Part shown: positions 666 to 26,098 of the stretch, in pieces
Position numbering within the stretch: the stretch's first letter is position 1
Layout: each line of letters opens with the position of its first letter
IMG/VR virus record: IMGVR_UViG_3300027985_000918
Coordinates: 338,384 to 402,383 of that record
DNA length: 64,000 nt
Strand: one strand, 5' to 3'
Notes under the pieces: generated by a model
What the model saw: only the letters and a program-made list of their open reading frames with translations
What the model was told of the DNA's origin: nothing
Database searches by the model: none
Made by a program: the position numbers and the translations under genes

Positions 666-1538
666 TCAGCGGGTGACGGTCAGGCGGGCCAGGCCACGGG
701 GGTTGTAGGCCCCGATGCCGAGGTTCTCAAACACAGAGAACCCGATGGTGCGGGCCTTGGGGTCGTCCGCCGAGAGGACGGTCAGCTCGGTACGGACCGG
801 AATGCGACCGAAGTGCTCGGCTTCGCAGCACAGGTACACGGTCCCGACCGGAACGAGGCGGCTGACGACGATCTGGGCGCCGTAGATGACACCCATGAGA
901 CCCGTCTTCAGCAGGACCGCCTGGGTTTCGATGTCCAGAATGTCCCGACCGAACTTACGGATGTCGGCATAGTCACGGGCATTCATGTACACCCGGGCCA
1001 CACGGAGGTCCCAGCGTTCGATCAGGGCAAAGGCATCGGCCAGCACCGCACCGGAGATCGGAGCGATGACGGGGATGTCCGGGTTAAGCTGACCCGGCAG
1101 GCTGTCGAACCCGGCGGTGGCGATGGAGTCCATGATGGCGAAGACACGCTCGTCCTCGGCAGCCTGGACCTGCGCCCGAGCCAGATCCTGAGCACGCTCG
1201 ATGAGATCGAAACGGCGCTCCTTGATCTGGGTGAGCGGGATCTCCGGGTTCGAGGCGATCTCGAACAGGGGGAAGATCACACGCCTGGGCTTCGTGATCG
1301 CCAGGATGTTCTGACCCTCTTCCCCTAGGACAAAGGCGGTGACATCCGGGTCCTTGTCGTAGATGGGGAGGGCCCCATCCGGAAGCTGTTCCACAAGGAA
1401 CGTCTTGCGCCCGACGGCAGCGTAGTCACGCCGGGTGCGGAGGGGCGACGTCATGCTGGCGGCCAACTTCGCCCGTCCCATCGGGGTCTGGATCAGCTCG
1501 CCAATCAGACGCTGCTTAACTGCGTTGGTGATGGCCAT
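666..1538 (-). CDS. Major capsid protein (probable HK97 fold, 290 aa)
   Basis: Last gene of the head operon, followed by a strong terminator. The sequence pattern (GRAKLAASM..PLR..RDY..VGRKTFLVEQLPDGALPIYDKD; FEIASNPEI; GFSVFENLGIGAYNPRG) resembles phage capsid proteins, recognised from memory. Confidence 0.8.
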   Translation of the reverse strand: MAITNAVKQRLIGELIQTPMGRAKLAASMTSPLRTRRDYAAVGRKTFLVEQLPDGALPIYDKDPDVTAFVLGEEGQNILAITKPRRVIFPLFEIASNPEIPLTQIKERRFDLIERAQDLARAQVQAAEDERVFAIMDSIATAGFDSLPGQLNPDIPVIAPISGAVLADAFALIERWDLRVARVYMNARDYADIRKFGRDILDIETQAVLLKTGLMGVIYGAQIVVSRLVPVGTVYLCCEAEHFGRIPVRTELTVLSADDPKARTIGFSVFENLGIGAYNPRGLARLTVTR

Positions 1539-4010: not shown

Positions 4011-5561
4011 TCAGTGCTGTCCCCGGAGGGCCTGGCCCCTCCGAGACATGATGTTGCCGAGCCGCAGGAACACCCTGGCCTCAGCGGTACTGGGCTTGCG
4101 CCCAAGGGCGGAGGCACAAGCCCCCAGGTAATCACGACCCGTACTGTACCCACTGGGGGCTCCCGCCCTCAGAACGGCCCGGTACAAGTTCCTATCGATC
4201 TCGATGCCAGCAGCCTTGTCCAGCGTTGCCACCCCCTCAATGAGAGCGATGTCCGAGCTGGCCGTCCTGGCCAATACCCGGATAGCAGCTTCGTGCTGGA
4301 CGGTATCGTTGGGTGCCGTGGAGTCGTTGACCGCACGGGATGTGTCTTCCTCCCGCATCTGGTCCTTGATCTTCCGCTTCACCCGATCCTGCATGTACTG
4401 GGTGAGCTCTTCCTCGGTCTCCTGGAGGGGAGACCCAGACTGAGCCGGGGCAACAGCGCCACCCTCACCTTCGTCCTCACCCACCTCGTCGCCCTCATCC
4501 TCCCATCCGGCAATGAAACTGTCTCTCCCCACCGCAAGAACATCCGAGTCCGTCAGAGGACCAGATGTGACCCTTCCCACCACACGAGCGTCCTGGTGGA
4601 AACGATCCTCCAAGATGCTAATGTCCGTGGCGGAACGCCCCATTGTGGCAGCACGCTGCATCTGGTTGGCATCCCACTCCGGGGGCGGGGAGTTGAGAAC
4701 CTTGGCAGCCCTGTCGAGCATAACCTGGGTAGGTTCCAACACGTTCCGCAGGACTGCTCCCGTGAACGCTGGAGTTTCCACCCAACTTGCCTCGATGAAC
4801 CGCACACCGCCAGTGGGATCGATGCTATCGTGCCCACACAACTCCGCCACACGGTGCTGGCGGCCCAACTCGTCATAGAACACGGTGCCCTTGGCATACT
4901 TGATATGGGCACACATCTCAGTTTCGTCGGCAGCCCAGTGTCCACACTTGGTACAAATCGTGCCATCCACCGTACAGCCCATGGACATAGTGCCCATCTT
5001 TCCGGACTCAATGGCCTTAACCAGCTCAGTGTGCTTGCGGTCCGTGGCAACGAGGATGTCAATGTAAATGCTATCCCCGATATCACGGGCCACGGCGTCG
5101 ATGATCCGACCCCGGGACTGTGATTCGATCTGAACGTGCTCAACGAAGTTGTGCCCGCCCACAAACGTCTCGAACGCCTTGAGCAAAACCGGGCGGCTCC
5201 AGGCATCGAGGTTGTTGTTGATGAACTTGTCGCAGACCGGCTTTACCCGGTAATCCCCATACCTGCGGTTCACTCGGAACCCATCCTCCATCTGGTGGCC
5301 GAGCTTAACCCCCTGGGGGGACTCGACATCGACCGACGCCACAATGGTGGCATGGGTCAGGAGGAAATTCTTGGGGTTGAACGGCTTACCCAAGAGTTGA
5401 GTGGCCCGTTCCACCAGGTTGCTGGCCATGGCGACCTTGGTGGGCCTGAAATCCTTGGCGATCTTCCCGCTCTGCCTTGCAGCAGCTCGGACATTGCCCC
5501 ACTGCTTCCGCCCAATTGACGGATTGGCGATTGTGGCATAGGCGTACTTCATCATCGGCAT
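4011..5561 (-). CDS. Prohead (maturation) protease with Cys/His-rich insertion (516 aa)
   Basis: NNNLDAW..L..FETF.G.HNFVEH, GRIIDA, SMGC..CTKCG..CAH, FIEASWVETPAFTGA: layout of HK97/herpes-like prohead proteases; head-module position. Confidence 0.7.
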   Translation of the reverse strand: MPMMKYAYATIANPSIGRKQWGNVRAAARQSGKIAKDFRPTKVAMASNLVERATQLLGKPFNPKNFLLTHATIVASVDVESPQGVKLGHQMEDGFRVNRRYGDYRVKPVCDKFINNNLDAWSRPVLLKAFETFVGGHNFVEHVQIESQSRGRIIDAVARDIGDSIYIDILVATDRKHTELVKAIESGKMGTMSMGCTVDGTICTKCGHWAADETEMCAHIKYAKGTVFYDELGRQHRVAELCGHDSIDPTGGVRFIEASWVETPAFTGAVLRNVLEPTQVMLDRAAKVLNSPPPEWDANQMQRAATMGRSATDISILEDRFHQDARVVGRVTSGPLTDSDVLAVGRDSFIAGWEDEGDEVGEDEGEGGAVAPAQSGSPLQETEEELTQYMQDRVKRKIKDQMREEDTSRAVNDSTAPNDTVQHEAAIRVLARTASSDIALIEGVATLDKAAGIEIDRNLYRAVLRAGAPSGYSTGRDYLGACASALGRKPSTAEARVFLRLGNIMSRRGQALRGQH

Positions 5562-6224: not shown

Positions 6225-6860
6225 TCAGGAGAACAGGTTGAACCCGTGGCTGGCCTTCTTGCCGGCGTCCTTCTCGTCGTCCTCGTCCTCGCCGTCAGAA
6301 GCCCAACGGCTACCGGCCTTCTTGCCAGCGTCCTTCTCGTCGTCCTCGTCCTCGTCGTCTGAAGAAGACTTGATGACGCCCGTGGCGAGTTCGAGAGCCT
6401 TGGCAGCCTTGGCAGCCCCTGCGGGGGTCAACTTGGCGCTCTTCAGAGCGGCCAACAGAGCCTTGAAGTTGGCCTGGACACCAGGGTTGGCGGGCTGAGG
6501 ATCGAGGTCCGGTGCGGCGATGTTGCCACTCTCGACCTCCTCTCGAAGCTCCCGGCGCTCCTGCTGGGAAAACTCACCCCTCATGTAGGACTCATCCGAG
6601 TCACCCTCCAGGGGGCCGGCCTTCTCGACACCAATCTCGGAGGGATTGAAATCGGCGTTCTTGAGATTGCCCTTCTGATCTCGCACCAGCCCGGCGGTCC
6701 GCTCGATGCGGTCGGCCAAAAGGTCGCACCGATGAGCGAAATCGGAAGCCACCTTCTCGGGGATGCCGAGAGAAGTGTGCTCCATCTGGATGAGGGTGGC
6801 AATGCGATCCAGAGCGGCGCTAGCCTGGAATGCGCCCTTCTTTGTGATGCTCTTGGGCAT
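6225..6860 (-). CDS. Hypothetical head protein with duplicated acidic C-terminal tail
   Basis: Start moved to ATG at 6860 (MPKSITKKGA) behind a GGAG RBS; tail has DEDEDDEKDAGKKA twice. Confidence 0.6.
   Translation of the reverse strand: MPKSITKKGAFQASAALDRIATLIQMEHTSLGIPEKVASDFAHRCDLLADRIERTAGLVRDQKGNLKNADFNPSEIGVEKAGPLEGDSDESYMRGEFSQQERRELREEVESGNIAAPDLDPQPANPGVQANFKALLAALKSAKLTPAGAAKAAKALELATGVIKSSSDDEDEDDEKDAGKKAGSRWASDGEDEDDEKDAGKKASHGFNLFS
6252..6354. repeat. 40-bp direct repeat (2 copies, 63-bp period), coding
   Basis: ggccttcttgcc(g/a)gcgtccttctcgtcgtcctcgtcctcg at 6252-6291 and 6315-6354, one mismatch. Confidence 0.85.
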
Positions 6861-6979
6861 GTCTTCGTGCTCCTGTTCCATCAAGACCTCAACCAAGTAT
6901 CAGCTCGGGCATTCCAAGCCCTCCGCTGATATGGTCAAGGTATAGACGAAAGATTGAGAATCAGTGGTTCAAAACCCGT

Positions 6980-12144: not shown

Positions 12145-14052
12145 TCACAGCGCCGGTGATGGCCTGTGCCCCTTGAAGCGGGCCTCCTTCCCGGACACTG
12201 GCTTAGTCAGGCCACTCTCCAGCTCACCCTGAAGCTCGGGATCAATGTGGGTGTCGCTCGCCAGAGCTTCCTCAGCGGCCTCTCGGATAGCTCTCTTGAT
12301 GGCTTCCTGGAAAGTATCCTTGAGGAAACGGTGAATCTCGTTCTGCTGTACTGAGCCAAACCGGGACATGCCCTCTTCCTTCGGTTTGGTATACTTCAGA
12401 CCCAGGACATCGGCCACTCGCTGGACAGCGTCGGAGGACTCCGCCAAGGCGTCCCCGACACGGCTGTAGACCGCCCGCAAGACTTCATTGAACGTAGCGT
12501 CCTGGAGTGTAAAAGTGTCCCTCTCCAGCTTCTCTCGGACGGTGTCGGCATCAAGGTTCAGCAAATCCAGAATGGTCTCGATGTCCAAACTCCCCTTCTG
12601 GTAGAGATTGAACAATGTGTCGAATGTCTCCTGGTTATCCCGCAAAGCCAAACGGGTGAACGACAGCCTCGGATGGATGACCACCTCTTCGCCGTCTTCG
12701 TCGTACTCGATGAACCCCATGCGGCGGCACATCGGCTCCAAAAGTTGCCGGTCTACGAAATCCTGAAGCAGCTCACGCAGCAACAGATAGCGGACGTTGA
12801 TCACCTCCAAGTGGATGCGGTCCCCACTGTAGCTCGACTCACCGGACAGCAAAGATTCAGTGACCCCGAGACCGGCATAAAGCTGCCGGTCAGTGAGGTC
12901 GTACTCGGAGGACAGGTCCAGCAAGCGGGAGTCCGCCCCCCCGCCCCGCTCTTCCCAGTTGACCTGGAAGTTCGTGATGACACTATAGTCCGGGTCCTGA
13001 AGAGCCAGATCCACCTGGTCCCGCAGCTCTTCCGTCTGCTCGGCGTTCATGTCCTCCGCCCAGATGATGCGGTAGGGGGTCATGTGCCGGGAGGCGATGG
13101 ATGTCTGGGCCTGGCGGAGTTTATCCCGGAACACCAGGACTCGGAGACACCGCTGAAGGATAGACTTCCCCCGAGCCTCGTACTGACTCTTCTTGCGGGC
13201 CAGGTAGTGGCAGAAGCTGCCCGCCTCAGGGGTGGTGTTCAAGGGGATGTTCTCACCCCGGAGGACGTAGTCCACAACCTCGGTAGGCATGGACTCGACC
13301 ACCTCTCGGGCTCGGAGATCTCCCTGAGTAGCCCTCTCGATGATGGCCTTGGTCTTGCTATCGGGAATCAGCTCAATGAGGCGCTTGTCCGTGAAGGGGA
13401 ACGCCTCCATCTGAATCTGCTCGGGGGGAAGAACTCGGAGAGCCGACCAGCCCTTGTAATTCTTCTTCACCCACTGGACCATCCTCTTTCGGGCATCCGG
13501 GTAAGGCCGCTCTTCCTCTACCAGGGACCCGTCAGCAGCAATCTCACGATATGTCTCATGAGTCACCTCCCGGGGCATATCTGGACTCGTGTCCTCTGCG
13601 AACACGAATACCTCCCCGACGAGGTAATATTCGTGGACCACCTCCAAAAGACGGTGCAGCAGACCAATATAGCGAACCCACCGCTCACAGAACCTCATGG
13701 ACGCCTCAGCCAGCTTCTTGTTCTTGGCCTTAGGCTTGCGGAGGCGTAGCTTGGAAAGGGGGAGTTCCCCGTGCAGATCGATGGCCTGACCCACAAAGGG
13801 GTCGTTGTCGTAAAAGAAGCGGAAATAGTTCCGCATCTCATCTACGGACTGAGGCAGCTCCAGGAAATCTGGGCTCAGCTCGGGACTGTAGAAGTTGCCC
13901 CCCGAGCCAACCATGGCCCCACCCGTAGCAGGGTAGGCCATCTTGAGGCGGGCTGTTCCGGTAACGAGCTTGCCGGGTTTGCCTACCTTGACCTTGTCCC
14001 GCTCGGGAAGGGTAGCCACCTTGACTGTATGCTTGGGATCGTTCTTCTTCAT
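12145..14052 (-). CDS. Portal protein (635 aa)
   Basis: Downstream of terminase; FYDNDPFVGQAIDL, YEARGKSILQRC..RDKLRQAQ pattern; size typical of large-phage portals. Confidence 0.75.
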   Translation of the reverse strand: MKKNDPKHTVKVATLPERDKVKVGKPGKLVTGTARLKMAYPATGGAMVGSGGNFYSPELSPDFLELPQSVDEMRNYFRFFYDNDPFVGQAIDLHGELPLSKLRLRKPKAKNKKLAEASMRFCERWVRYIGLLHRLLEVVHEYYLVGEVFVFAEDTSPDMPREVTHETYREIAADGSLVEEERPYPDARKRMVQWVKKNYKGWSALRVLPPEQIQMEAFPFTDKRLIELIPDSKTKAIIERATQGDLRAREVVESMPTEVVDYVLRGENIPLNTTPEAGSFCHYLARKKSQYEARGKSILQRCLRVLVFRDKLRQAQTSIASRHMTPYRIIWAEDMNAEQTEELRDQVDLALQDPDYSVITNFQVNWEERGGGADSRLLDLSSEYDLTDRQLYAGLGVTESLLSGESSYSGDRIHLEVINVRYLLLRELLQDFVDRQLLEPMCRRMGFIEYDEDGEEVVIHPRLSFTRLALRDNQETFDTLFNLYQKGSLDIETILDLLNLDADTVREKLERDTFTLQDATFNEVLRAVYSRVGDALAESSDAVQRVADVLGLKYTKPKEEGMSRFGSVQQNEIHRFLKDTFQEAIKRAIREAAEEALASDTHIDPELQGELESGLTKPVSGKEARFKGHRPSPAL

Positions 14053-16680: not shown

Positions 16681-17364
16681 TCACACGGCGCTTCGGATTC
16701 GAGCCTTGGCCTCGGCTTCCCATGTGGGGTCGCTCGTCAGAGCGGCGAACTTGGCGAACACCGTCTCGATCATCTCGGGGCGGGAACCCACTGCCGACAT
16801 AGCCTCTTTGAAAGTGCTCATGACGTGGGAGAAATACGCCTGAACAGCGGGGCTCTCTGGGTTGAACGACCTCTCCCGATTACGGTCAATGCGCCTCTGA
16901 AGGGTGTCTGCCAGAGCCTTTAGACCCTGGACCCTTCGGGTAGAGATGTTGGCCGTCTCAGCAATCTTCCCAGACCGCTCCAGCTCTTTCCGGGCAAAGG
17001 CCAAAGAAGCCTGCTCTTCACCGAGGGCGAGGATGATGGCAGTCATCAAATCTTCCTCGGTGTCCTGACGGGCTGCCCGAAGAACGTTGTCCTCCGAGAG
17101 AGCCTGATCCTTCTTGCTGAGGATGGCGGCTACAGTATCGTTGGCCGGCTCGACCTCAATCTTCTTCTTGCGGCCAGGCCTCCCCATCATGCAAATGGGA
17201 GACCCGTCCGATTTGGTCTGGATCTCATCCGAGGTTGCCAGATCTTCGATGGCCTTGTACTTCAGCTCACCCAGTTCAGTACGGACCTGCACCCGACGGG
17301 CACCCTCGGGAGCCTTAGAAAGCACAACCTCATGGTCTTGACCCTGGTGCGTCTTCCGTGCCAT
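16681..17364 (-). CDS. Probable terminase small subunit (227 aa)
   Basis: Directly upstream of terL, helical and charged; assignment from position only. Confidence 0.45.
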   Translation of the reverse strand: MARKTHQGQDHEVVLSKAPEGARRVQVRTELGELKYKAIEDLATSDEIQTKSDGSPICMMGRPGRKKKIEVEPANDTVAAILSKKDQALSEDNVLRAARQDTEEDLMTAIILALGEEQASLAFARKELERSGKIAETANISTRRVQGLKALADTLQRRIDRNRERSFNPESPAVQAYFSHVMSTFKEAMSAVGSRPEMIETVFAKFAALTSDPTWEAEAKARIRSAV

Positions 17365-17936
17365 TAGGTCAACTCCGGTGCTCCGAATGTGGGAACCCCA
17401 TCGGCCATGAACCCGTTACTGGGGGTGATCGTTCCGAAATTCACCACCGAGCTGGACCCCAGGAACTCGAAACCCACCTGCATCATTGGGTTGCCGTAGG
17501 AGATAGACACTGTAGTCGACGTACCCGAAGAGTTGTCCGCTGTGAACCCCCCTCCTAGGGCATTGATGGCAGCCACCAGGTAATTCGCTGTGACCTGTGC
17601 TGTGGGGCCCGGGAGCCAGTCCACACCCTGGCGTAGGGCATAGTCCCCCAGAACGAGCCTCCAGTCGGCGGCCGAGAAGTCGTTGTTAGCCACTACGAAT
17701 GAGGCCGTAAGATCTGCACGGAGGGTGGTATCCAGGAGGACATTCCCCTTGGGGTCATTGCCCACAAACCCAACATGGCTGCGGACAGTGTCCGTGTACC
17801 GATTGGTTGGGGGTCCTCCCACCTGTGCGGGATCCTCCCCGTGAGTGAGGGTGCCCGCTAGAGTCGTGAACCCCTTCCCCAAGACGAACCGAGGGGTGAT
17901 ACCAGTATTCGGCTGGTACACGGGTTTTGCCATCAC
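17364..17936 (-). CDS. Hypothetical virion structural protein (190 aa)
   Basis: G/T/N-rich beta-type composition, coupled within the structural operon. Confidence 0.55.
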   Translation of the reverse strand: MMAKPVYQPNTGITPRFVLGKGFTTLAGTLTHGEDPAQVGGPPTNRYTDTVRSHVGFVGNDPKGNVLLDTTLRADLTASFVVANNDFSAADWRLVLGDYALRQGVDWLPGPTAQVTANYLVAAINALGGGFTADNSSGTSTTVSISYGNPMMQVGFEFLGSSSVVNFGTITPSNGFMADGVPTFGAPELT

Positions 17937-19915
17937 TTGCCCTCCCCGACATTCAACAAAATGCCATCGAACAGTAGCTCTCCCAGCTTTTCGATGTCGG
18001 GGGTGTTGTCCAGCGTAACGTCCATGTTGGCCACCAACCCGAACTCCGAAACGATACTGGTGTGCTGATTGGTGAACAGAGAGGCGGTGGCCTCAGCATC
18101 CGAAGCGTTGGCCCCCTTGATGGCCTCTTCCTGAAGAGCCCTGAGATCGACCCCCTCCAAAGCGGCGGCCTCGATGAGCGGCTTATTGTAGACGGAGCAG
18201 TGACCACTCCCATCCAACATGGCTTTCTTGTGGACACAGGACCCGCAGCGCCCCATCGCCAACACCCGCTTGACCTGGTTGGTCCGATGCTTGCTGGCAG
18301 CTTCCTTGCAGCCCGTGTACCCCGTCGGAGAGGCATAGGCTGCAGCGTCCACGTAGACGTGTCCCGCCAACCCCTCATGCTGGGCACGAAGCTCTCGGAT
18401 ATCCTGGGCAGCCTTCCGCAAAAGGTCAGTGTTCCAACGGGCCTGGATTAGCTGGTCGAGATCCTTCCCCATCCATCCCTCATTCATCGCCCTCCGAGTC
18501 CAAAGAGCCAGCCGCTCAAACTCCGCCGTCTTCGTGGTCCCGCTGCCCTCCTTCCGGCTCAGCTCAGCACCCTTTTTGACGGCCAGGCCGGCACCCTCAT
18601 AGGTTCCCGTCTTTGGGGCGGAAACCCACTCGGAGGCCCTCTTGAGCATATCGTCGGTACCGAGCTTCCGCAGCTCATACACCTGGCGAGAGGTCAGATC
18701 TCCAGATGCCAGCCACTGAGAGACCTTCGCCAGAGCCTTGGCCCGACGGGCCTGGGACCCATCGTTGACCCGGATCTCCTCCATCACCTCGGGGGTAGAC
18801 GCCTGAAACTGGCGTACCGCCTCGGCCAGGGTGACAGTGTCAGCAGGTCGGACCTCGACCGGCTTGGGCCTCTCGACATGGAAAGCATAGGCGGCCGTGG
18901 GGCCCTTCTTGAACGCCCCCCGCAGAGCCTCCTGAGGACCCTTGGACAAATCCAGCTCGTAGCCCGCTGCCTTGAGGAGAGGGCCATAGTGCCGGAGAGC
19001 CTGCTCCCACGGGACAGCGGGAACGGCCTGCATCCCTAGCTTGGTCCCGATGGAGGGGTCATCGGTGATGACGTACCGGGCTCCCCGAGCCCGCCTCTTG
19101 ATCTCCTGAACCCACTTGCCGTTCTTGATTCCGGGGAAAGCGTTGGCCCGGATGAACACGTTGCCGGCGAGGCCGATGTCCCTGCTCAGGTGAGCCACGA
19201 CACCTCTGGTGTTGGATGCGTCATCACCCAGAGCAGCCACCAAATCCCGCTTGATCTCGTCAAGCGGCTTACCAAAGTGAGCGTCCCGGACAGCCTTCAT
19301 GGCAGCAGCCCGGACCAGGTGCTCATCGGAATCCTGCTTGGGGCCGGGAGTTGCCGGATGTGGACTGTTGTTCATCTGCTGGTGGTAGCGCTCCGCCTCC
19401 AGGTCCTTAGCCGGGATACGAGAAACGCCATCCGTCCTTCGGTTTACCCCCCAGGCTTCCTCCAGCTCTGCGATACCCTTGTCAACGGGGTTATCGGGGA
19501 GTCTGTTCGGGTCCTGACCCTGAGTCGGGTCAAGCCAAAGCAGATCCATGATAGCGGCGTTCTTGTCGTGCCCTTCCTCGACAGTGAACATGGTCCCCAG
19601 GTGGAGGCCTCCCTCGTTGTCCTGCATAAGGGCGGCCTCGTCCAAAGGAGCCTCGACGGAAGCACCCATGATGGAAGCCACCATGTCCTGTGGGCGCTTG
19701 TAGCTACCCCGATGGGCACCACTCCCCGGTGCGGGTCCTGGAGAGGCCCCAGGCAGACCAGGCCGCTCCTTAACTCCCTCACCCATCGTTTGGTCGAAAT
19801 GGTATCCGTCCAAGCCGTAGTTCGAGCCCAGACTCCACTGGAAATCTTCGCTAGGCATGTTGGATTCGGCCAGGATCTCGGCCGCCCAATCGAGGGCCTT
19901 CTTCTTGTTGCTCAT
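17933..19915 (-). CDS. Large hypothetical virion protein with C-terminal Cys cluster (660 aa)
   Basis: Coupled ORF; C..H, CGSCVH and HCSVYNK cluster; several KxA[AE] sites. Confidence 0.6.
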   Translation of the reverse strand: MSNKKKALDWAAEILAESNMPSEDFQWSLGSNYGLDGYHFDQTMGEGVKERPGLPGASPGPAPGSGAHRGSYKRPQDMVASIMGASVEAPLDEAALMQDNEGGLHLGTMFTVEEGHDKNAAIMDLLWLDPTQGQDPNRLPDNPVDKGIAELEEAWGVNRRTDGVSRIPAKDLEAERYHQQMNNSPHPATPGPKQDSDEHLVRAAAMKAVRDAHFGKPLDEIKRDLVAALGDDASNTRGVVAHLSRDIGLAGNVFIRANAFPGIKNGKWVQEIKRRARGARYVITDDPSIGTKLGMQAVPAVPWEQALRHYGPLLKAAGYELDLSKGPQEALRGAFKKGPTAAYAFHVERPKPVEVRPADTVTLAEAVRQFQASTPEVMEEIRVNDGSQARRAKALAKVSQWLASGDLTSRQVYELRKLGTDDMLKRASEWVSAPKTGTYEGAGLAVKKGAELSRKEGSGTTKTAEFERLALWTRRAMNEGWMGKDLDQLIQARWNTDLLRKAAQDIRELRAQHEGLAGHVYVDAAAYASPTGYTGCKEAASKHRTNQVKRVLAMGRCGSCVHKKAMLDGSGHCSVYNKPLIEAAALEGVDLRALQEEAIKGANASDAEATASLFTNQHTSIVSEFGLVANMDVTLDNTPDIEKLGELLFDGILLNVGEGK

Positions 19916-20595
19916 GCCGTCCTCCTTGCCGAGTACCGAGCTGCAAGGCGAGATGCCTGCACATGGATATTACCGTCGGCAGAGGCCAGTCTGGGCTTTC
20001 CGTCGGTCACCTTATCATCGTCCCGATCCGCCTCGGACTCTTCCTGCTCCGCCCACTCCTCCGGGTCCTCCCGAATTTCCTCCACTTCGTCCATGATCTG
20101 CTTGACCTCATCCCGATCACGGGGGTCTCCACCAGAGTCATCGACCCGAGGATTCCAATGGACGGCCTGCATCTCGTCGTACATCGAGTCGGAAACAGCG
20201 CTCAACGCCTCCAGGACGTTCGTGTAGAGCTTACGGATGTCCTTAATTGTCAGAATATAACCCTTCCCACCAATGGACCCGTCGGGGCTGATCCGCTGAC
20301 TCTTGATCTTGTTGAAAATGGTGTAGGCACTCTGGGCATGCCCCAGTGCCATCAAAGTAGCTCTCAGGGACTTGGCCAGGGGCTCCAGGTTCTTGGGGTT
20401 GAACTCGTAATCGGGGTCAATCATCCGCTCAGATGCCCCGGCGGGATTCCACGCCCATTCCTTGGAGTCCCCCCCACGATCCTTGATGAAGCGGACTTCA
20501 CCGGCCGTGCGGTCCATGGCGGCACGTTTCATATGTGCCGAAGCCACCCGGCGGATGGCTTCGGCGTCAAGCTGTGGAGTCCTCGTCGTGGACAT
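19912..20595 (-). CDS. Hypothetical virion protein with RVAxxH and RLAxxY motifs at both termini (227 aa)
   Basis: N-terminal IRRVASAHMKRAA, C-terminal SRLAARY; GGAGG RBS; late-type motif upstream. Confidence 0.65.
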   Translation of the reverse strand: MSTTRTPQLDAEAIRRVASAHMKRAAMDRTAGEVRFIKDRGGDSKEWAWNPAGASERMIDPDYEFNPKNLEPLAKSLRATLMALGHAQSAYTIFNKIKSQRISPDGSIGGKGYILTIKDIRKLYTNVLEALSAVSDSMYDEMQAVHWNPRVDDSGGDPRDRDEVKQIMDEVEEIREDPEEWAEQEESEADRDDDKVTDGKPRLASADGNIHVQASRLAARYSARRTA

Positions 20596-20611
20596 ACTGT
20601 GGAACCTCCAA

Positions 20612-20636
20612 CCCTACTGAGCGAAACCTATAAACC
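20612..20636 (-). promoter_or_regulatory. Putative phage late promoter
   Basis: Minus-strand GTTTATAGGTTTCGCTCAGTAGGG just before the RBS; a near-identical layout GTTTATAG..GGTAGAG lies upstream of the 1706-aa gene (12117-12141). Confidence 0.5.
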
Positions 20637-20651
20637 AAATACCCGCCGGAA

Positions 20652-21071
20652 TCAGTGGGGCATCTGCTTGAACGGAATACGACTACGCAGGCTAAACCCC
20701 TCCATCGCCTGATCTACTTCATCCGACCCGATAGACCGGGTGTTCACCCCGACACGAAAACCGTAGTTAGCCACCATGACTCTCGGATTCGACTTCGGGC
20801 AGAAAAACGTCGTCCCCAGGCCAGTCCCGCCCGCCCAGGCGTCTCCCGACTCCAGATCCTTCTGAAGCTCCATAAACAGGCCGAAGAGTTTCTTGTCCCA
20901 TGTCTGGATGGGTTGGATCAGATGGTTGGCAGTGCCGTAGCCGGAGAAGCTCGTCCACAGCCAGTAGTCCCCCCCACCGGATTGGTGGAGGTACACCTTA
21001 GGGGCTTCTCCTTCTGCTGCCTGCTTACGAGTATGGGCCTCTGCGACCCTTTTGATTGCTGCACGGTTCAT
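20652..21071 (-). CDS. Hypothetical protein with N-terminal RVAEAH motif (139 aa)
   Basis: Starts MNRAAIKRVAEAHTRKQAA; operonic spacing. Confidence 0.6.
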   Translation of the reverse strand: MNRAAIKRVAEAHTRKQAAEGEAPKVYLHQSGGGDYWLWTSFSGYGTANHLIQPIQTWDKKLFGLFMELQKDLESGDAWAGGTGLGTTFFCPKSNPRVMVANYGFRVGVNTRSIGSDEVDQAMEGFSLRSRIPFKQMPH

Positions 21072-21074
21072 CGC

Positions 21075-21668
21075 TCAGATCTCCTTCAGGGGATTCCCGT
21101 CATAGTCGAAAAGGCGCTCGATGACAAAGCCGGCCGAGTCCTGACGAAAAGACCAGAGGTCCTTAGTCGCCATGTGGACCAGCTCATCATCGGCATTGAC
21201 AGCGCCGGCCTGAGCGAAAAATCCCGCCAGGCTGTTCAAATCGGCCGTTCGGATAACCACGTTGTAGGCCATCCTGCGGTTCGACTTTGCCGGTGCCAGG
21301 TGGGAAGCCAAGATGGGACGGAAAACCCCATCGTCCCACTTGACGAAAACCATCCCATCCTCAGAGGCCGTGACCTTGCCCTCAGCCGCCTTGACCTTGA
21401 TCACCGTCCCTTCAATGCCGGGATCGGGAAGGGAGTCGTAGGTCAGCACAGATCCCGTATTGTACTTGAACGACACTCGGGTCCCTGCCTCGACGGGCAG
21501 CCCGATTCCGCCAGCCTGACGACCCCGGTCGGTCAGGCCGACCATGACAGACATCTCGGGGCCCTCCATGTTCTTCGCCTGAAGCAGACGGTCGATGGCC
21601 GAGGGAACACTCGGGTTGGCGTTCAGGTGGCCATTAGCATCGGCCCATTTGTCCCAGAAATCACTCAT
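21075..21668 (-). CDS. Hypothetical protein with SH3-like core (197 aa)
   Basis: AGTRVSF..GTVIKV..VFVKWDDG pattern; operonic. Confidence 0.6.
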   Translation of the reverse strand: MSDFWDKWADANGHLNANPSVPSAIDRLLQAKNMEGPEMSVMVGLTDRGRQAGGIGLPVEAGTRVSFKYNTGSVLTYDSLPDPGIEGTVIKVKAAEGKVTASEDGMVFVKWDDGVFRPILASHLAPAKSNRRMAYNVVIRTADLNSLAGFFAQAGAVNADDELVHMATKDLWSFRQDSAGFVIERLFDYDGNPLKEI

Positions 21669-21671
21669 GAT

Positions 21672-22073
21672 TCACCACCTGCTCTGCTTCACAGAGTCGA
21701 GCCAATACACCATATCCTTCTCCAGGTTGGCGCTCGGCCCAAACTCCTTGTCCTGGTTGTACAGAGAAACCTTGAACTTCCTCGGGGTGCCCTTCACAGT
21801 GATCGTGAAAGGCTCCTTGGTGTCGTGGATCGTGATGATGAGCTGGTAGGGGCCCCGCTTGACAGTATTCTTGCTGAAGCTCCACCACTCCGTGATGACC
21901 TTCTCCACGTCCACCCACCAGTCTCGAACCACCGCCTGCATCCGGGTCTCGAACGGGGTCGTGTTGACCCCAGCGAAATTCGTCCCCCGGGCCTCACGCA
22001 GGAAGGGGACCAGAAGGGAGCGAGTCTCCGGACGCTCCGCAGCCAGCTTCTTCAGATCGTTGTACAAACTCAT
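21672..22073 (-). CDS. Hypothetical protein with N-terminal KLA..P..R..L.P.LR motif
   Basis: Start at 22073 gives an ATGA overlap with the upstream stop; begins MSLYNDLKKLAAERPETRSLLVPFLREA. Confidence 0.65.
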   Translation of the reverse strand: MSLYNDLKKLAAERPETRSLLVPFLREARGTNFAGVNTTPFETRMQAVVRDWWVDVEKVITEWWSFSKNTVKRGPYQLIITIHDTKEPFTITVKGTPRKFKVSLYNQDKEFGPSANLEKDMVYWLDSVKQSRW

Positions 22074-23326
22074 CGTCGGATCCTCCACCTCACGTTCAAA
22101 GTCTGAGCGGTGTTGAACTCGATGTCGAAACCGCTGGCGCCCTTGTTCGTGACCCAGGGGGGCTCATCATTAGCTGGGTGGGAATCCAGCTCCAAGGCCA
22201 CGTCATAGCTGTCGTCCGGCTGGGGGATGCCGAATGTTACCGTCTCGGTAGCAGAGGCGGCGAACCCCTGAGTCCCACCCAGAGAGCCGTTGAACTCGGC
22301 GTTCAGGTTCCCCGCCAGCAGCGAAGAGTAGGTGCTGTTGAGCAGAGCCAATGTGGAAGTCTCCAGCAGGGAGACCACCCCCAGTACCGAGTTGGTAGCC
22401 TGCCCAGACTGGTCCCCGCTGAGCTGGAGCCGCTTGGCAGAACCCATACTCATGCCCAGAAGCAGTAGGCTCCCACCCCCATCCAGGTCCACCGAGACCG
22501 CCGGGGACAATCCCGTCTCCGAAGCCACCTGGTGACTGTTCTCGATGATGTACGCCTCATGGGCCTGAGAGGGGAGATCCTGGGCGGTATCCCACCGGAG
22601 AGACACGGCGGCCTCGCAGACCGCAGAGCGCAAACACAGCCGGGCCGCTTCTTCCCCAACCACCAGGGAGCCAAGGCCCCCTCCGAATCGGCAGAGGTCC
22701 GTCTCGACGAAGTTGCATGCCGTAACCCACAGGGGGCGTCCGCCCCCCAGAGAATCGTCCCAGAGGGTGCAGCTCTTGATGTAGATCCCCACCTCCCCCA
22801 CCGTCGAGGCAGCCCCGCCGACGATGCGGAGAGCGGCCTTGTTGTCGTGGGCGTTGTGGATCTCGAACCCCTCAATGAGACAAAACTCCGGGGTGGTCCC
22901 AAGCTGGGAGGACAGGATGACCGTATGGTCATTCCCCGGGGCATTCGGGGTGGCGTTCAGAGGGTCCTTGAGGGTGGGTCGTCCGAGACCCACCAGACTC
23001 ACCCCGTTCCGCACAATGTTGATCGTCTCTTCGTACACCCCAGGCATCACCAGGATGATGTACGGGTTGGTCGGGCTGGCGAGACTTGGGACTGCGTCGA
23101 TAGCCGACTGGATAGTCGTGTACGCAGCCCCCGTCCCCGACTTACCAACAACCAGCACATTTCCGATAGACCGAAGACCAGCGAGCTGATTCAGCAAAAT
23201 GCCCCCCGTCACGACAGCGTCGGTGAACTTGAGGGCACCCGTGACAGCGTCCCGCTCGATGAGCAGGGTGTCGCCGGAGCCGGGCTCCACCTGTAGGGAA
23301 TCTGCCTTGAAGGGAGGCTGTGCCAT
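22070..23326 (-). CDS. Pectin-lyase-like beta-helix virion protein (spike or fibre) with C-terminal small beta domain (418 aa)
   Basis: VVGKSG..YTTIQSAIDA..IILVMPGVYEETI is typical of pectinesterase-like beta-helix N-termini; C-terminal SYDVALE..VTNKGASGFDI. Confidence 0.6.
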   Translation of the reverse strand: MAQPPFKADSLQVEPGSGDTLLIERDAVTGALKFTDAVVTGGILLNQLAGLRSIGNVLVVGKSGTGAAYTTIQSAIDAVPSLASPTNPYIILVMPGVYEETINIVRNGVSLVGLGRPTLKDPLNATPNAPGNDHTVILSSQLGTTPEFCLIEGFEIHNAHDNKAALRIVGGAASTVGEVGIYIKSCTLWDDSLGGGRPLWVTACNFVETDLCRFGGGLGSLVVGEEAARLCLRSAVCEAAVSLRWDTAQDLPSQAHEAYIIENSHQVASETGLSPAVSVDLDGGGSLLLLGMSMGSAKRLQLSGDQSGQATNSVLGVVSLLETSTLALLNSTYSSLLAGNLNAEFNGSLGGTQGFAASATETVTFGIPQPDDSYDVALELDSHPANDEPPWVTNKGASGFDIEFNTAQTLNVRWRIRR

Positions 23327-23334
23327 CGTCTACC

Positions 23335-23973
23335 TCACTCCCCATCCCGCAGGAGTGGGGCCAGGTGCTGCCGGAGTTCGGGAACCTCGGCTGCGAGCTT
23401 CTTTAGGTCGGCCTCCAAAGAAGCTCGGTGCCCGCTCCGATGTGCCGCATTGACGATGTCGTCAATCTGGTCCACCACCTGCTGGGCACGGTCAGCCAGG
23501 GCCACCGCCACGGGGCGGATCTTCTTTTCAAGCAGGGTAGGGGCCTCGATGTAGTGGCTCCCGAACCTCTCCAGACCCTTGAGCTGGCTCTGAACACTCT
23601 TGATGGCGTCCACTACGGACTTCACGTCAATGAACTGGGAGAAGCTCTTGTCGTTCTGGATCAGCTCGTATGCCTGGACGTAGGGGTCATCCCCAATATT
23701 TGCCGCCTTGTCCCTCATTGCGAATCTCCGCTCGTTCAGCTTAACCTTGGCCCAAACCGCACCTGCGTGTCGGATGAACTTCTCTGCCGTGGATTTGTCC
23801 GGAAACCTCAGAGGGTCCCTCTGATTGTTGGTCGGAGACAACCAGGCCCCTTGGGCATCCCGGATGTACCAGCTCCGGGGGGTACTGATACCAACGGGAA
23901 CCGCCTCGTAAGGTCCCGGGAAAGTGTACTTTTTGATCAGGTCGTAAACCCGCTGGATCTCAGGAGTAGCCAT
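23335..23973 (-). CDS. Hypothetical protein with C-terminal KLA..PELRQHL.PLLR motif
   Basis: Start refined to 23973 (MATPEIQ), 1 nt after the upstream stop; ends HRASLEADLKKLAAEVPELRQHLAPLLRDGE. Confidence 0.65.
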   Translation of the reverse strand: MATPEIQRVYDLIKKYTFPGPYEAVPVGISTPRSWYIRDAQGAWLSPTNNQRDPLRFPDKSTAEKFIRHAGAVWAKVKLNERRFAMRDKAANIGDDPYVQAYELIQNDKSFSQFIDVKSVVDAIKSVQSQLKGLERFGSHYIEAPTLLEKKIRPVAVALADRAQQVVDQIDDIVNAAHRSGHRASLEADLKKLAAEVPELRQHLAPLLRDGE

Positions 23974-23974
23974 A

Positions 23975-24658
23975 TCACACCACCACGTCGTAGCCAACAT
24001 CAACGGTTTCGGCTGGCTGCAGCTCGATGCCGAGGGCAACCGTGAACCCGGTCTTGGTCTTACTGGTGACCCTAACGGGAAAAAACCCTGAAGGCTCCAG
24101 AAGAACCCGGTAAGTCGCCGTCGGGAGAGCCGACGTGAATGTCACCGTTTTTGAGCTATTGTCCGCCTGAGCGAACGTCAGAGTTCCCCCCAGAGCGCTC
24201 GCTGCAGATGTCGAGACCAGAATCGCCCAGTCCACATCCTTCTCATCCCCGACAGCCCCGTAAGTTGAAGGGGCCACCAAGAGGAAGGACGTGATGGTCT
24301 TGTTCTCGACCCGCATGGGGGTTCCGTCGGGGGTTGTTACCTGAACCCGGTAATCGGTGTTGTTCAGAAGCCCGGGGGCCACCGCTACCGTGCGGGAGGC
24401 CTGCCCGTTGAACGTCTCAGTGCCGCTGGTCACGGACGACTCGGTGGTCAGGAGCTGGGCCAGATCCACCGAGTCGTACATGTCCTGGAGGACCTCTTCG
24501 GGCACCCCCGTCATCGAGTCTGTAATCAGCCCCCGAGGCCCACGAATATTGCGAACCGACGATGCGGACTGCTCATTGATGACGATGTCCCACACGTACT
24601 CCTGTCCCCCTCGGGAGGACTTGTATGTGAGGACTGTCTGGACTCGGGAGAGGGCCAC
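23975..24658 (-). CDS. Virion structural protein with two repeated small beta domains (227 aa)
   Basis: Two repeats, TDYRVQVT..VENKTITSF and TYRVLLE..VTSKTKTGF, similar to the C-terminus of 22070-23326. Confidence 0.6.
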   Translation of the reverse strand: MALSRVQTVLTYKSSRGGQEYVWDIVINEQSASSVRNIRGPRGLITDSMTGVPEEVLQDMYDSVDLAQLLTTESSVTSGTETFNGQASRTVAVAPGLLNNTDYRVQVTTPDGTPMRVENKTITSFLLVAPSTYGAVGDEKDVDWAILVSTSAASALGGTLTFAQADNSSKTVTFTSALPTATYRVLLEPSGFFPVRVTSKTKTGFTVALGIELQPAETVDVGYDVVV

Positions 24659-24672
24659 AGATCACCTCCGGC

Positions 24673-25758
24673 TCAGCTCCAGACCGAGAACTGGTACTTG
24701 TACTTGATGCCGCCCTGGTCCATCTTCGCCTGGAGCTGCTTCCCCGTCATGCGCTTGATGTCGTCCTGGTTGGCCTTGGCCCACAGGAACATCTTGCGGG
24801 CGCCCGCAGGACTGGTACTCACCAACTTGGTGTAGTGGGGGTCTCCACCGAAGGCGTACTCATCAAGCTGCTTGTCGGTGTAGCCATTGTTGAGGGTGAC
24901 GTCGAACGAGGTCCACTCAGCCTTGATATAGAACTCATCCTTCGCCTTGATCTCGACGGGGGCATAGTCCACCGGCTCAACCTGGAGGTAGTTGACATCC
25001 TCTTCTTTAGGCATCCAACGACCCGTGAGGGACTGGGAAACCCAATCGGGGTACTCCAAACCCTCTTTATCCAGATCCTTGAACGCCTTCTCGATGGCCT
25101 TCTTGAGGCCAGCAGCAGAGGCTTCGGCGGTCTGGGAGGCGTTGGGCTTCCAGTCCCGCTCCAGGTTCTCGATCATGAAGTAGTCGTAGATCTTCCCCAA
25201 CGGTCCCGTCCCGTTGAGACTCTGGATCTGACCACCAATGCCAAACGTGAACCGCTTGAGGCTCCGCTTACCCTTCTGGGGCAGTTCCTCGATGACGACG
25301 TAGTGCCGGGGGTGCCCGGAGATACGGATACGGGTCTTGTCGCCGACGAGAATCTTGTCCCACTTCTCACGGGCGATTCGAGCAGCGGCCCACCGCCCCA
25401 TGAAGTCCTCATCGGCCCTGGCTCCCTCAAACTCCCGCCATGCCTGCTCGGCAGCCTTGCCGGTCAGAATGCTCTTGGTCTGGGGGTAGTAGAGGACCCG
25501 GTCACCCGCCCGGAAAGGGATTCCCTTCTCATCCACGCCGGGGCGCCGGGCGTTGATCCAGCGGGGGTCTCCCCCCTGACCACGGCTCCGGCCGGACCAG
25601 CCGGCCGACTTATCGTCGTTGCCCTCAACATACCCGAGCCCCGGGTCCTCCGCTGACTCCACGTTGAGGTGGGCGTGCTTCCGAAGGAGAGGAACCAGGT
25701 GCTTGCGGATGGACGGCACGTCCACTGCCAACTTGCTCAGCTTGCTGTAGAGATTCAT
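24673..25758 (-). CDS. Hypothetical protein with N-terminal KLA..P.IRKHLVPLLR motif (361 aa)
   Basis: Begins MNLYSKLSKLAVDVPSIRKHLVPLLRKHA; includes FRAGDRVLYYP (SH3-like). Confidence 0.65.
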   Translation of the reverse strand: MNLYSKLSKLAVDVPSIRKHLVPLLRKHAHLNVESAEDPGLGYVEGNDDKSAGWSGRSRGQGGDPRWINARRPGVDEKGIPFRAGDRVLYYPQTKSILTGKAAEQAWREFEGARADEDFMGRWAAARIAREKWDKILVGDKTRIRISGHPRHYVVIEELPQKGKRSLKRFTFGIGGQIQSLNGTGPLGKIYDYFMIENLERDWKPNASQTAEASAAGLKKAIEKAFKDLDKEGLEYPDWVSQSLTGRWMPKEEDVNYLQVEPVDYAPVEIKAKDEFYIKAEWTSFDVTLNNGYTDKQLDEYAFGGDPHYTKLVSTSPAGARKMFLWAKANQDDIKRMTGKQLQAKMDQGGIKYKYQFSVWS

Positions 25759-25789
25759 GTTGTTACCTGCCTGGAACTACTGGGTTAGG

Positions 25790-26098
25790 TTACCAAACCC
25801 CTGTTGTCTCAAAACCCCGCCTCTCGAACCAGCTCTGAAGAGACAGCATAGCTTCCCGATTCGAGGACCACAGAGTCACACAGTCGAAACTCTCTCGGAT
25901 GCCGAGGTCTGGGATGGTAGGCACCCCCGCCATCGCCACCTTGCCATCTCTCTGGGATCGGAGCAGCCCGGGGATGTAGCGGTAATCCTTCGCCCCGTAC
26001 AAGACCGAGAATCGAAACTCAGCGGTGGCGATGCGGCTGACCCACCTCCGGGCCACTCGCCTTGCCATGACGATCCTCTTCTCGTTATCCTGGGACAT
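25790..26098 (-). CDS. Hypothetical protein with RVARRW motif (102 aa)
   Basis: AGGAG RBS; late-type ATCGGTAGAG upstream at 26128-26137. Confidence 0.6.
   Translation of the reverse strand: MSQDNEKRIVMARRVARRWVSRIATAEFRFSVLYGAKDYRYIPGLLRSQRDGKVAMAGVPTIPDLGIRESFDCVTLWSSNREAMLSLQSWFERRGFETTGVW

What the first reader, a model, noticed from the sequence alone, without database searches (positions are those of the whole stretch)
21996..25740. A 20-aa peptide module (KLAxxxPELRxHLxPLLR) reused at the termini of unrelated proteins: candidate capsid-targeting tag
Seen: three otherwise unrelated ORFs in the head module carry it: LKKLAAERPETRSLLVPFLR (N-terminus, 21996-22055), LKKLAAEVPELRQHLAPLLR (C-terminus, 23347-23406) and LSKLAVDVPSIRKHLVPLLR (N-terminus, 25681-25740). 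A fourth copy is 30 kb away (54794-54853). The module is always terminal, at either end, and is usually separated from the body by an Ala-ending site (..REA, ..KHA, HRA-S). Established analogy: T4 internal proteins use a short capsid-targeting sequence removed by the gp21 protease, and encapsulin cargos use terminal loading peptides. Inference: a portable packaging tag that loads diverse cargo into the procapsid.
Basis: partly seen in the sequence, partly recalled or inferred. Interest (0 to 1): 0.9.

Follow-up and report, generated by a model that had tools for sequence, protein, structure and literature searches.

The report
Portable docking peptide of huge phages
A 25-28 residue helix-kink-helix peptide is attached to the ends of many unrelated proteins of an uncultured 402-kb phage and its relatives; it most likely acts as an address tag for one shared phage structure, possibly the inside of the capsid, but no experiment yet shows which.

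Summary
Four copies lie on the minus strand at the stated coordinates: N-terminal in two ORFs and C-terminal in two. The bodies share nothing else. Conservation is at the protein level, because synonymous sites are near saturation and the flanking DNA is unrelated.

The window is the end of a 402-kb IMG/VR phage contig. Its relatives include the uncultured phage LR745208.1, and more distantly Tunturi_5 and phage G.

The motif is longer than reported: xLRxxhh[KR]LAHxxPELRxxLhPhL[KR]xA[AG]. A profile of it finds 3,361 protein clusters in metagenomes. No true copy appeared among 80 pattern matches read from 596 Gb of cellular genomes. Among GenBank phages only LR745208.1 matched, and it carries at least 13 copies. 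Pfam and PHROGs have no model for it.

"Always terminal" does not hold outside the window. Many proteins carry 2-5 copies separated by charged linkers.

Tagged genes fill variable slots in a conserved block upstream of terminase, portal, protease and capsid genes. They also occur beside a phage GroEL, a portal and replication genes. Tags within one genome resemble each other more than tags of other genomes.

Best reading: a docking tag for a shared partner (about 0.8). A capsid or scaffold-core target is plausible but unproven (about 0.4). The cleavage-site idea is unsupported.

The parts
21996..22070 (-). Tag copy A (25 aa), N-terminal
   Evidence: HMM 43 bits. It starts at residue 2 after the likely ATG at 22073, which overlaps the stop of the upstream gene as ATGA.
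21672..22073 (-). Tagged protein A (about 133 aa from ATG 22073; pI 9.2), body of unknown function
   Evidence: No Pfam or PHROGs hit. The body is unrelated to B-E.
23347..23421 (-). Tag copy B (25 aa), C-terminal, followed by 3 residues and the stop
   Evidence: HMM 41 bits; translation.
23335..23973 (-). Tagged protein B (about 212 aa from ATG 23973; pI 8.8)
   Evidence: No family hit. The likely start lies 1 nt after the stop of the upstream gene.
25681..25755 (-). Tag copy C (25 aa), N-terminal
   Evidence: HMM 42 bits. The AF2 secondary structure has helices at 3-13 and 15-27 followed by about 35 residues of coil; the model as a whole is low-confidence.
24673..25758 (-). Tagged protein C (361 aa; pI 9.1). 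Its body has tagged homologues in four other phage contigs.
   Evidence: Cluster with L015, L026, L028 and L047.
54794..54868 (-). Tag copy D (25 aa), C-terminal, followed by 1 residue and the stop
   Evidence: HMM 49.5 bits.
54788..55978 (-). Tagged protein D (396 aa; pI 9.3), in a replication-type neighbourhood beside a divergent sigma-like gene
   Evidence: In LR745208.1 one ORF holds a D-like body, one tag and a C-like body.
6225..6896 (-). Acidic 223-aa head-cluster protein, homologous to multi-tag proteins of other phages. The shared module FNPSEIG...SYMRGEFS lies at about 6525-6650.
   Evidence: phmmer E 2.5e-8, 1.9e-11 and 1.4e-10 to tagged proteins. jackhmmer finds 45 hits; regex.
2452..3978 (-). 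Acidic, low-complexity 508-aa protein between protease and capsid genes; scaffold candidate by position and composition. It carries the short module GEVPEAFKKNWKK (about 2914-2952), which also occurs in multi-tag proteins.
   Evidence: pI 4.3; sequence; module match. The scaffold role is an inference.
666..1538 (-). Major capsid protein (candidate partner)
   Evidence: phrog_2522 E 4e-48.
4011..5561 (-). Head maturation protease (candidate processing enzyme)
   Evidence: phrog_18299 E 6e-13. No match among PDB sequences.
12145..14052 (-). Portal protein (candidate partner)
   Evidence: phrog_16240 E 1e-25. 64% identity to LR745208.1.
16681..26098 (-). Conserved framework block (p227a, p190, p660, p227b, p139, p197, beta-helix 418 aa, p227c, p102) with variable slots that hold the tagged genes. 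It lies between the sigma/NusG pair and the terminase gene.
   Evidence: The same order occurs in L009, L013, L028, L047, L052 and L054, while the tagged genes in the slots are non-homologous, 138-1780 aa long and carry 1-5 tags. The block is absent from the tag-less Tunturi_5.

Best explanation
The module is an autonomous docking peptide. It consists of two short amphipathic helices broken at an invariant Pro, with an invariant Arg in the second helix, and it is joined to its carrier by a flexible linker.

It gives otherwise unrelated phage proteins a common address, namely one shared phage-encoded partner or assembly. Single-tag proteins would be the clients; in this genome they are mostly basic and of unknown function. 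Proteins with 2-5 tags separated by Lys/Glu/Asp-rich linkers would be multivalent scaffolds that cross-link the same partner.

The most likely destination is the procapsid interior or scaffolding core. The clients would then be encapsidated, and perhaps ejected with the DNA, as T4 internal proteins are.

Shown here: the portability of the module, its protein-level conservation, its restriction to viral sequence, its multivalency, its genome-specific co-variation, and its linkage to a conserved block next to the head genes.

Inferred, not shown: that it binds one partner, what that partner is, that the proteins are packaged, and whether the tag is ever cut off.

Confidence is about 0.8 for 'docking tag for a shared partner'. 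The 0.4 given in the confidence field is for the capsid or scaffold-core destination specifically.
For: - There are four significant copies in the window, against 0 pattern matches in shuffles.
- The bodies are unrelated, and synonymous sites are near saturation.
- A profile of 33 tags finds 3,361 clusters at E<=1e-3.
- 0 of 80 pattern matches read from cellular genomes (87 found) are true tags, against about 27 of 33 in viral contigs.
- Tags within a genome are 72% identical and tags of different genomes 53% (none of 5,000 label permutations reached the observed difference), with genome-specific residues shared across non-homologous bodies.
- AF2 of a natural two-tag protein gives both tags as helix-break-helix at pLDDT about 80-89, a linker at 58-67 and pTM 0.26. 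The tags therefore look like independent units on a flexible string.
- Variable tagged genes fill slots in a block that runs into the terminase, portal, protease and capsid genes in 7 contigs.
- The head-cluster protein 6225-6896 is homologous to multi-tag proteins.
- Elsewhere a tagged gene lies directly after a portal gene and near an ART-PolyVal protein (L010), between the capsid-adjacent gene and the scaffold candidate in LR745208.1 (L047), and 3.5 kb from the capsid gene (L026).
- All 5 tagged proteins of this genome have pI 8.8-9.7, against a window median of 5.8.
- Bodies fused to tags elsewhere are accessory or effector-like: pentapeptide repeats, GNAT, RelA/SpoT, WGR, LRV/HEAT.
- No core replication enzyme of the window is tagged.
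- T4 precedent: diverse internal proteins share only a capsid targeting sequence that loads them into the scaffolding core (PMC3012670).
Against: - There are no virion or expression data for any tag-bearing phage, because none is cultured.
- Tunturi_5 has related capsid (E 2e-81), protease, portal and terminase proteins but no tag. The partner is therefore not simply these proteins.
- Tagged genes also occur among replication genes (UDG, WGR, SNF2, DnaB), beside GroEL, and scattered over LR745208.1.
- The function of the framework block is unknown. Pfam, PHROGs, NCBIfam and PDB sequence searches found nothing, and one member is a beta-helix protein that could be a tail spike.
- No clear protease site follows the tag.
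Confidence: 0.4

Rival explanations
1. The tag recruits clients to a different assembly than the capsid. This could be a multivalent scaffold-client condensate or 'viral factory', or the unknown structure encoded by the conserved framework block (for example p660, p227b or p197), which could be tail-associated or cytoplasmic.
For: - Proteins with 2-5 tags on disordered charged linkers are typical of scaffold-client systems.
- The tags co-occur with the framework block but not with the capsid, portal, protease and terminase set alone, since Tunturi_5 lacks both tags and block.
- Some tagged genes lie in replication neighbourhoods or carry WGR domains.
Against: - No core replication or transcription enzyme in the window is tagged.
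- The block is contiguous with the head genes.
- A head-cluster protein is homologous to multi-tag proteins.
- There is no evidence for any compartment in these phages.
Confidence: 0.25
2. The tag is a homotypic association motif. Tags bind each other as helical bundles, so tagged proteins co-assemble without a separate receptor. This does not exclude the capsid-core reading.
For: - The tag is an amphipathic helix-kink-helix.
- Tags are multivalent.
- The greater similarity of tags within a genome would also follow from self-recognition.
Against: AF2 of a two-tag protein predicts no confident tag-tag packing (pTM 0.26). This was a single-sequence run and is weak evidence.
Confidence: 0.15
3. 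The tag is a recognition signal for a chaperonin, unfoldase or protease (a degron or GroEL-targeting signal), or a minimal DNA-binding helix pair that tethers basic proteins to phage DNA.
For: - A phage GroEL lies next to tagged genes in 4 contigs, including the fifth copy of this genome.
- Tags sit at either terminus and are followed by a linker.
- Tagged proteins are basic and the tag holds 4-6 basic residues.
- Some tagged proteins carry WGR domains.
Against: - Internal, repeated copies in long linker proteins do not fit a degron.
- A 25-aa motif with 8 near-invariant positions is far more specific than known degrons.
- GroEL adjacency holds for a minority of loci.
- The tag matches no known DNA-binding family.
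Confidence: 0.1
4. The copies are a chance similarity, a low-complexity artefact, or a DNA-level repeat such as a recombination or regulatory site that happens to be translated.
For: None found.
Against: - The pattern matches 0 times in 100 shuffles.
- HMM scores are 41-50 bits.
- 3,361 clusters match the profile.
- Synonymous sites are near saturation and the flanks are unrelated.
Confidence: 0.01

Closest known systems
T4 capsid targeting sequence (CTS) of internal proteins IPI-III and Alt
   Same: Both are short conserved peptides and are the only feature shared by diverse, variable and often basic accessory proteins. In T4 the peptide loads these proteins into the scaffolding core of the prohead (PMC3012670). 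Here, as for the T4 internal-protein genes, the tagged genes are variable; they fill slots in a conserved framework.
   Different: From my own knowledge, the T4 CTS is about 10 aa, strictly N-terminal, and cut off after Glu by gp21. The present module is 25-28 aa, sits at the N-terminus, the C-terminus or internally, is often repeated, and shows no evident cleavage site. There is no sequence similarity. Packaging has not been shown here.
C-terminal coat-binding helix-turn-helix of scaffolding proteins (P22 gp8; also the C-terminal tail of herpesvirus scaffold)
   Same: Both are terminal helix-turn-helix or amphipathic-helix elements with essential basic residues that dock onto the inside of an HK97-fold shell (from my own knowledge). 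Here there is a helix-Pro-helix with an invariant Arg, and multi-tag proteins related to a head-cluster acidic protein.
   Different: Those scaffolds carry one such element, and it is not shared with cargo proteins. Here dozens of unrelated proteins carry it. Binding to the capsid protein has not been tested.
Encapsulin cargo-loading peptides and bacterial microcompartment encapsulation peptides
   Same: These are terminal tags at either end, separated from the cargo by a flexible linker, that load unrelated cargo into a protein shell (from my own knowledge).
   Different: They are found in cellular systems, and their sequences and lengths differ. Encapsulin peptides are short and extended rather than two helices. 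No true tag was found in cellular genomes.
Multivalent linker plus shared-motif systems (pyrenoid Rubisco-binding motif with EPYC1; carboxysome CsoS2)
   Same: In these systems one short motif occurs once in clients and several times, on disordered linkers, in a scaffold protein (from my own knowledge). The same architecture is seen.
   Different: They are unrelated in sequence and biology. Condensate formation is not shown here.
Pfam LRV (PF01816) and HEAT-like helical repeats
   Same: The residue pattern L..LA.[DE].P..[VL]R..[VL] resembles one LRV unit, and some tagged proteins carry true LRV arrays after the tag.
   Different: The tags occur singly or separated by long linkers, not as a solenoid. 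The window proteins do not hit LRV, and the profile-profile comparison is not significant (probability 0.4%, E 0.14).

Membership tests
T4-type capsid targeting sequence | Short peptide at the extreme N-terminus of otherwise unrelated proteins of one phage | tested here: inconclusive
   In this genome 3 of 5 copies are N-terminal and 2 are C-terminal. Elsewhere many copies are internal or repeated.
T4-type capsid targeting sequence | Removal by the prohead protease at a consensus site directly after the tag | tested here: inconclusive
   A prohead protease gene is present. No clear site follows the tag: [AGS]-x-E occurs within 12 aa after 36% of tags against 17% of background windows. N-terminomics would be needed.
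T4-type capsid targeting sequence | Tagged proteins are present in proheads or virions, and the tag suffices to encapsidate a foreign protein | not testable with these tools
   No cultured phage carries the tag.
Scaffolding-protein coat-binding helix-turn-helix | Terminal helix-turn-helix with conserved basic residues | tested here: met
   AF2 gives helices 3-15/17-28 and 90-100/102-112, broken at the invariant Pro, at pLDDT 80-89. Arg17 is invariant.
Scaffolding-protein coat-binding helix-turn-helix | Direct binding to the inner face of the major capsid protein | not testable with these tools
   No multimer prediction is available here. Tunturi_5 has a related capsid protein but no tags, which argues for caution.
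Pfam LRV / HEAT repeats | Significant match to the family profile, with tandem arrays forming a solenoid | tested here: not met
   The four window proteins have no Pfam hit at E<=0.1. hhalign of the tag profile against LRV units gives probability 0.4%. Copies are single or separated by long linkers.
Encapsulin / microcompartment targeting peptides | Occurrence in cellular shell-protein operons | tested here: not met
   None of the 80 pattern matches read from 596 Gb of bacterial and archaeal genomes is a true tag. The tag is viral.

The most novel reading that the evidence does not exclude
Huge phages of this clade use a sequence-readable address code. A 25-28 aa helix-kink-helix tag marks the proteins that are loaded into the procapsid, and probably delivered to the host. 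Multi-tag, linker-rich proteins built from this and several other short portable modules form the scaffolding core itself as a multivalent, possibly condensate-like, network. If this is right, the packaged and injected proteome of thousands of uncultured phages could be read directly from sequence.
Probability: 0.3. Interest if true: 0.85.

Novelty: new variant of a known kind. Interest (0 to 1): 0.7.

Why it matters
Internal and ejected proteins of large phages are hard to identify, and outside T4 there is almost no sequence rule for what gets packaged. This module is absent from Pfam and PHROGs and from the 8.4 million papers searched, yet it occurs in more than 3,000 protein clusters.

If it is a capsid or assembly address, it would:
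- predict the cargo of uncultured huge phages;
- point to their host-takeover and anti-defence arsenal, which sits in variable slots;
- explain how very large capsids organise a scaffolding core;
- give a natural handle for loading foreign proteins into phage particles.

Even if the destination is not the capsid, it is a clear case of a viral scaffold-client system based on a short linear module.

Tried and rejected
- **Family libraries.** Pfam, PHROGs and NCBIfam on the tagged proteins and the framework block gave nothing useful beyond a weak pectinesterase-like stretch in the 418-aa protein. PHROGs on 99 tagged proteins gave only families of unknown function.
- **Solved structures.** PDB sequence searches with the protease and with profiles of p660, p231 and p197 found nothing.
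- **GenBank phages.** tblastn of protein C found no match. tblastn of tag queries matched only LR745208.1.
- **Protein databases.** The region-restricted search of the 5.8-billion-protein set gave only 7 hits and no annotation. Cluster look-up gave no names.
- **Structure prediction.** AF2 of protein C from a single sequence was poor (pLDDT 38), so no fold search was run.
- **Cleavage site.** The idea was examined (Ala at +2 and -1, [AGS]-x-E) and set aside as unsupported.
- **LRV homology.** Examined and not supported.
- **DNA repeat.** Rejected.
- **Possible fifth window copy.** 'LAPFLREDG' at 33376 is not a tag by the HMM.
- **Genomic contexts.** Those of P0006 and P0009 were uninformative.
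- **Tunturi_5.** The whole genome was fetched and scanned, and no tag was found. It cannot serve as an experimental model.
- **Not done.** Phage G was not scanned with the HMM; tblastn alone found nothing there. The rest of the 402-kb contig could not be fetched whole, so its copy number (at least 5) is a lower bound.

Full report
**1. Observation**

The four peptides exist at the stated coordinates, on the minus strand. Their positions in the ORFs are as follows.
- A begins two residues after the likely ATG (22073) of ORF 21672-22088. That ATG overlaps the stop of the upstream gene.
- C begins at residue 2 of ORF 24673-25758.
- B ends 3 residues before the stop of ORF 23335-24039.
- D ends 1 residue before the stop of ORF 54788-55978.

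A DNA pattern made of the invariant codon positions hits 4 times in the window and never in 100 shuffles. A profile HMM finds exactly these four in the six-frame translation, at 41-50 bits. BLASTP among these proteins and a fifth tagged protein of the same genome aligns only the tag.

At identical amino acids, 38-65% of codons differ. Third positions differ in 52-64% of codons, and the flanking DNA is random-like. Selection therefore acts on the peptide, and the copies are old.

**2. Source and gene context**

The window is the last 64 kb of a 402,383-bp IMG/VR viral contig. Its portal protein is 64% identical to that of the 485-kb uncultured phage LR745208.1, 38% to Tunturiibacter phage Tunturi_5 and 27% to Bacillus phage G. 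Nearly all genes are on the minus strand.

In the direction of transcription the genes are a DnaX-like clamp loader, a NusG-like protein, a sigma-70 region 4 protein, p102, tagged C, p227c, tagged B, a 418-aa beta-helix protein, tagged A, p197, p139, p227b, p660, p190, p227a, large terminase, portal, a 1706-aa protein with 2H-phosphoesterase and topoisomerase IB domains, an acidic 223-aa protein, p211, the head maturation protease, an acidic 508-aa protein, p231 and the major capsid protein.

Copy D lies 30 kb away among replication genes, beside a divergent sigma-like gene.

**3. The module is widespread and viral**

The same pattern scanned over IMG/VR gave 33 stretches. About 27 are true tags, from about 15 different contigs of 12-435 kb, and they include a fifth copy in this genome.

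The extended consensus is x-L-R-x-x-h-h-[KR]-L-A-H-x-x-P-E-L-R-x-x-L-h-P-h-L-[KR]-x-A-[AG]. L2, A10, P14, R17 and L24 are invariant in 33 copies. Ala at +2 occurs in 47% of instances and Ala or Ser at -1 in 48%.

LR745208.1, fetched whole, has at least 13 copies, nearly all directly after the start Met. A profile of 33 tags searched against 1.84 billion representative proteins found 3,361 proteins at E<=1e-3 and 189 at E<=1e-10.

The same DNA pattern in 596 Gb of bacterial and archaeal genomes gave 87 matches. None of the 80 read is a true tag. Among 50,697 GenBank phages only LR745208.1 matches. Pfam and PHROGs have no model for the tag, and motif strings occur in none of the papers searched.

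**4. Architecture**

In the loci most copies start 2-10 residues after a plausible start codon with a ribosome-binding site. A few are C-terminal.

Among the 150 best database proteins, which are biased towards multi-copy proteins, 143 carry 2-5 copies. Of the 150, 119 have an N-terminal copy, 55 have a C-terminal copy and 40 have both. There are 163 internal copies, separated by Lys/Glu/Asp-rich linkers. 'Always terminal' therefore does not hold.

AF2 of a natural two-tag protein predicts each tag as helix-break-helix at pLDDT about 80-89. The linker is low-confidence and there is no confident overall fold. Protein C shows the same two helices followed by coil, in a poor model.

Tagged proteins are mosaics that also reuse other short modules. 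Two of these occur in the window's head cluster:
- GEVPEAFKK(N/Q)WK, in the acidic 508-aa protein between protease and capsid genes;
- the FNPSEIG...YM.G.F module, in the acidic 223-aa protein.

The 223-aa protein is significantly similar to multi-tag proteins (phmmer E 2.5e-8 to 1.9e-11).

**5. Evidence for a shared partner**

Tags within a genome are 72% identical and tags of different genomes are 53% identical; none of 5,000 label permutations reached this difference. Lineage-specific residues are shared by non-homologous bodies. For example, position 11 is Ala in this phage, His in LR745208.1, Ser, Asn or Tyr in others, and position 8 is Lys here and Arg in LR745208.1.

In LR745208.1 a D-like body, one tag and a C-like body form a single ORF.

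**6. Evidence bearing on the destination**

For the capsid or core:
- The block NusG, sigma, p102, slot, p227c, beta-helix, slot, p197, slot, p227b, slot, p660, p190, p227a, terminase, portal recurs in seven contigs. The framework is conserved, but the tagged genes in the slots are non-homologous, 138-1780 aa long and carry 1-5 tags. This recalls the variable internal-protein genes of T-even phages, which share only the capsid targeting sequence (PMC3012670).
- Tagged genes lie directly after a portal gene and near an ART-PolyVal protein (L010). They also lie between the capsid-adjacent gene and the scaffold candidate in LR745208.1, and 3.5 kb from the capsid gene in L026.
- All five tagged proteins of this genome are basic (pI 8.8-9.7, against a window median of 5.8).
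- Bodies fused to tags elsewhere are accessory-like: pentapeptide repeats, GNAT, RelA/SpoT, WGR, LRV/HEAT.
- No core replication enzyme of the window is tagged.

Against, or neutral:
- Tagged genes also lie between UDG, WGR, SNF2 and DnaB genes, beside a phage GroEL in four contigs, and scattered over LR745208.1.
- The function of the framework block is unknown.
- Tunturi_5 has related capsid, protease, portal and terminase proteins but neither tags nor the block. The partner may therefore be encoded in the block rather than being the capsid protein.
- No cleavage consensus follows the tag.

**7. Verdict**

The module is a portable, virus-restricted docking peptide, which I consider about 0.8 likely to address proteins to one shared partner. 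The capsid or scaffold-core destination is the best single guess (about 0.4). It rests on synteny, homology of a head-cluster protein to multi-tag proteins, and analogy with T4; it does not rest on any direct evidence.

The rivals are another assembly or condensate (0.25), homotypic association (0.15, not exclusive of the capsid reading), and a chaperonin, degron or DNA-binding signal (0.1). Chance or a DNA-level repeat is excluded.

The concept of a targeting peptide is known. This module, its size, its use at either end and in multivalent arrays, and its breadth are not described in the libraries searched.

Noticed in passing
window 19912-20595 (-) and 20652-21071 (-): The two adjacent proteins share a second kind of N-terminal peptide (AI[RK]RVA.AH.[RK]..A ... 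AGE). In homologues of the first protein the conserved body starts right after '..TAGE'. One homologue (L028:5437-6585) carries a full tag instead. This may be a shortened or degenerate tag, or a second propeptide type.
   Followed up: partly
window 6980-12100 (-): A 1706-aa protein next to the portal has 2H-phosphoesterase (2'-5' RNA ligase-like) and eukaryotic-type topoisomerase IB domains. Parts of it are homologous to an ART-PolyVal protein (L010) and to proteins next to tagged genes in LR745208.1. It looks like a 'polyvalent' protein, a class thought to be packaged in capsids.
   Followed up: partly
P0002, P0004, P0006, P0015, P0016; L006, L016, L017, L019; window about 2914-2952 and 6525-6650: Tagged proteins reuse at least six other short portable modules: GEVPEAFKKQW; FDPSEIG..EPYM.G.F; CEKLPEGPMRDNC; RFEEG..ADPT.NM; PETKERMKG; and a Cys-containing GKGYG...CYYETGDE.DRCYVT module. 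This suggests a wider vocabulary of short motifs.
   Followed up: partly
L008:1662-3269 (same 402-kb genome, outside the window); also L015, L018, L048: A phage-encoded GroEL-type chaperonin (Cpn60; phrog_5725 E 1e-115) lies next to tagged genes in four contigs.
   Followed up: partly
L047:39502-41268 (LR745208.1): One ORF combines a body like that of window protein D, a single tag, and a body like that of window protein C. This Rosetta-stone type fusion links the two window proteins.
   Followed up: partly
window 46670-51175 (-) and 58656-63728 (-): A class II ribonucleotide reductase and an SNF2-type helicase are each interrupted by an intein with a LAGLIDADG homing endonuclease.
   Followed up: no
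window 26171-27438 (-) and 56209-57732 (+): A sigma-70 region 4 protein and a NusG/KOW protein head the conserved block. The only clear plus-strand gene of the window has what looks by eye like a C-terminal sigma region-4 helix-turn-helix (no Pfam hit) and diverges from tagged gene D.
   Followed up: no
L019 (435-kb contig), L052:10001-15343, L054:2212-5019: Very long tagged proteins carry 3-5 tags: 741 aa with 3, 1780 aa with 5 and 935 aa with 4. Internal copies are typically preceded by K-x-A/S.
   Followed up: partly
window 22070-23326 (-) and 23975-24658 (-): The 418-aa beta-helix (pectinesterase-like) protein and the 227-aa protein share a C-terminal beta-rich domain. Either could be a virion surface or tail protein, which leaves the nature of the framework block open.
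   Followed up: no
L143-L148 (Tunturi_5): Tunturi_5 shares capsid, protease, portal and terminase homologues with this phage. It lacks the tags, the framework block and the acidic 223-aa and 508-aa proteins.
   Followed up: yes
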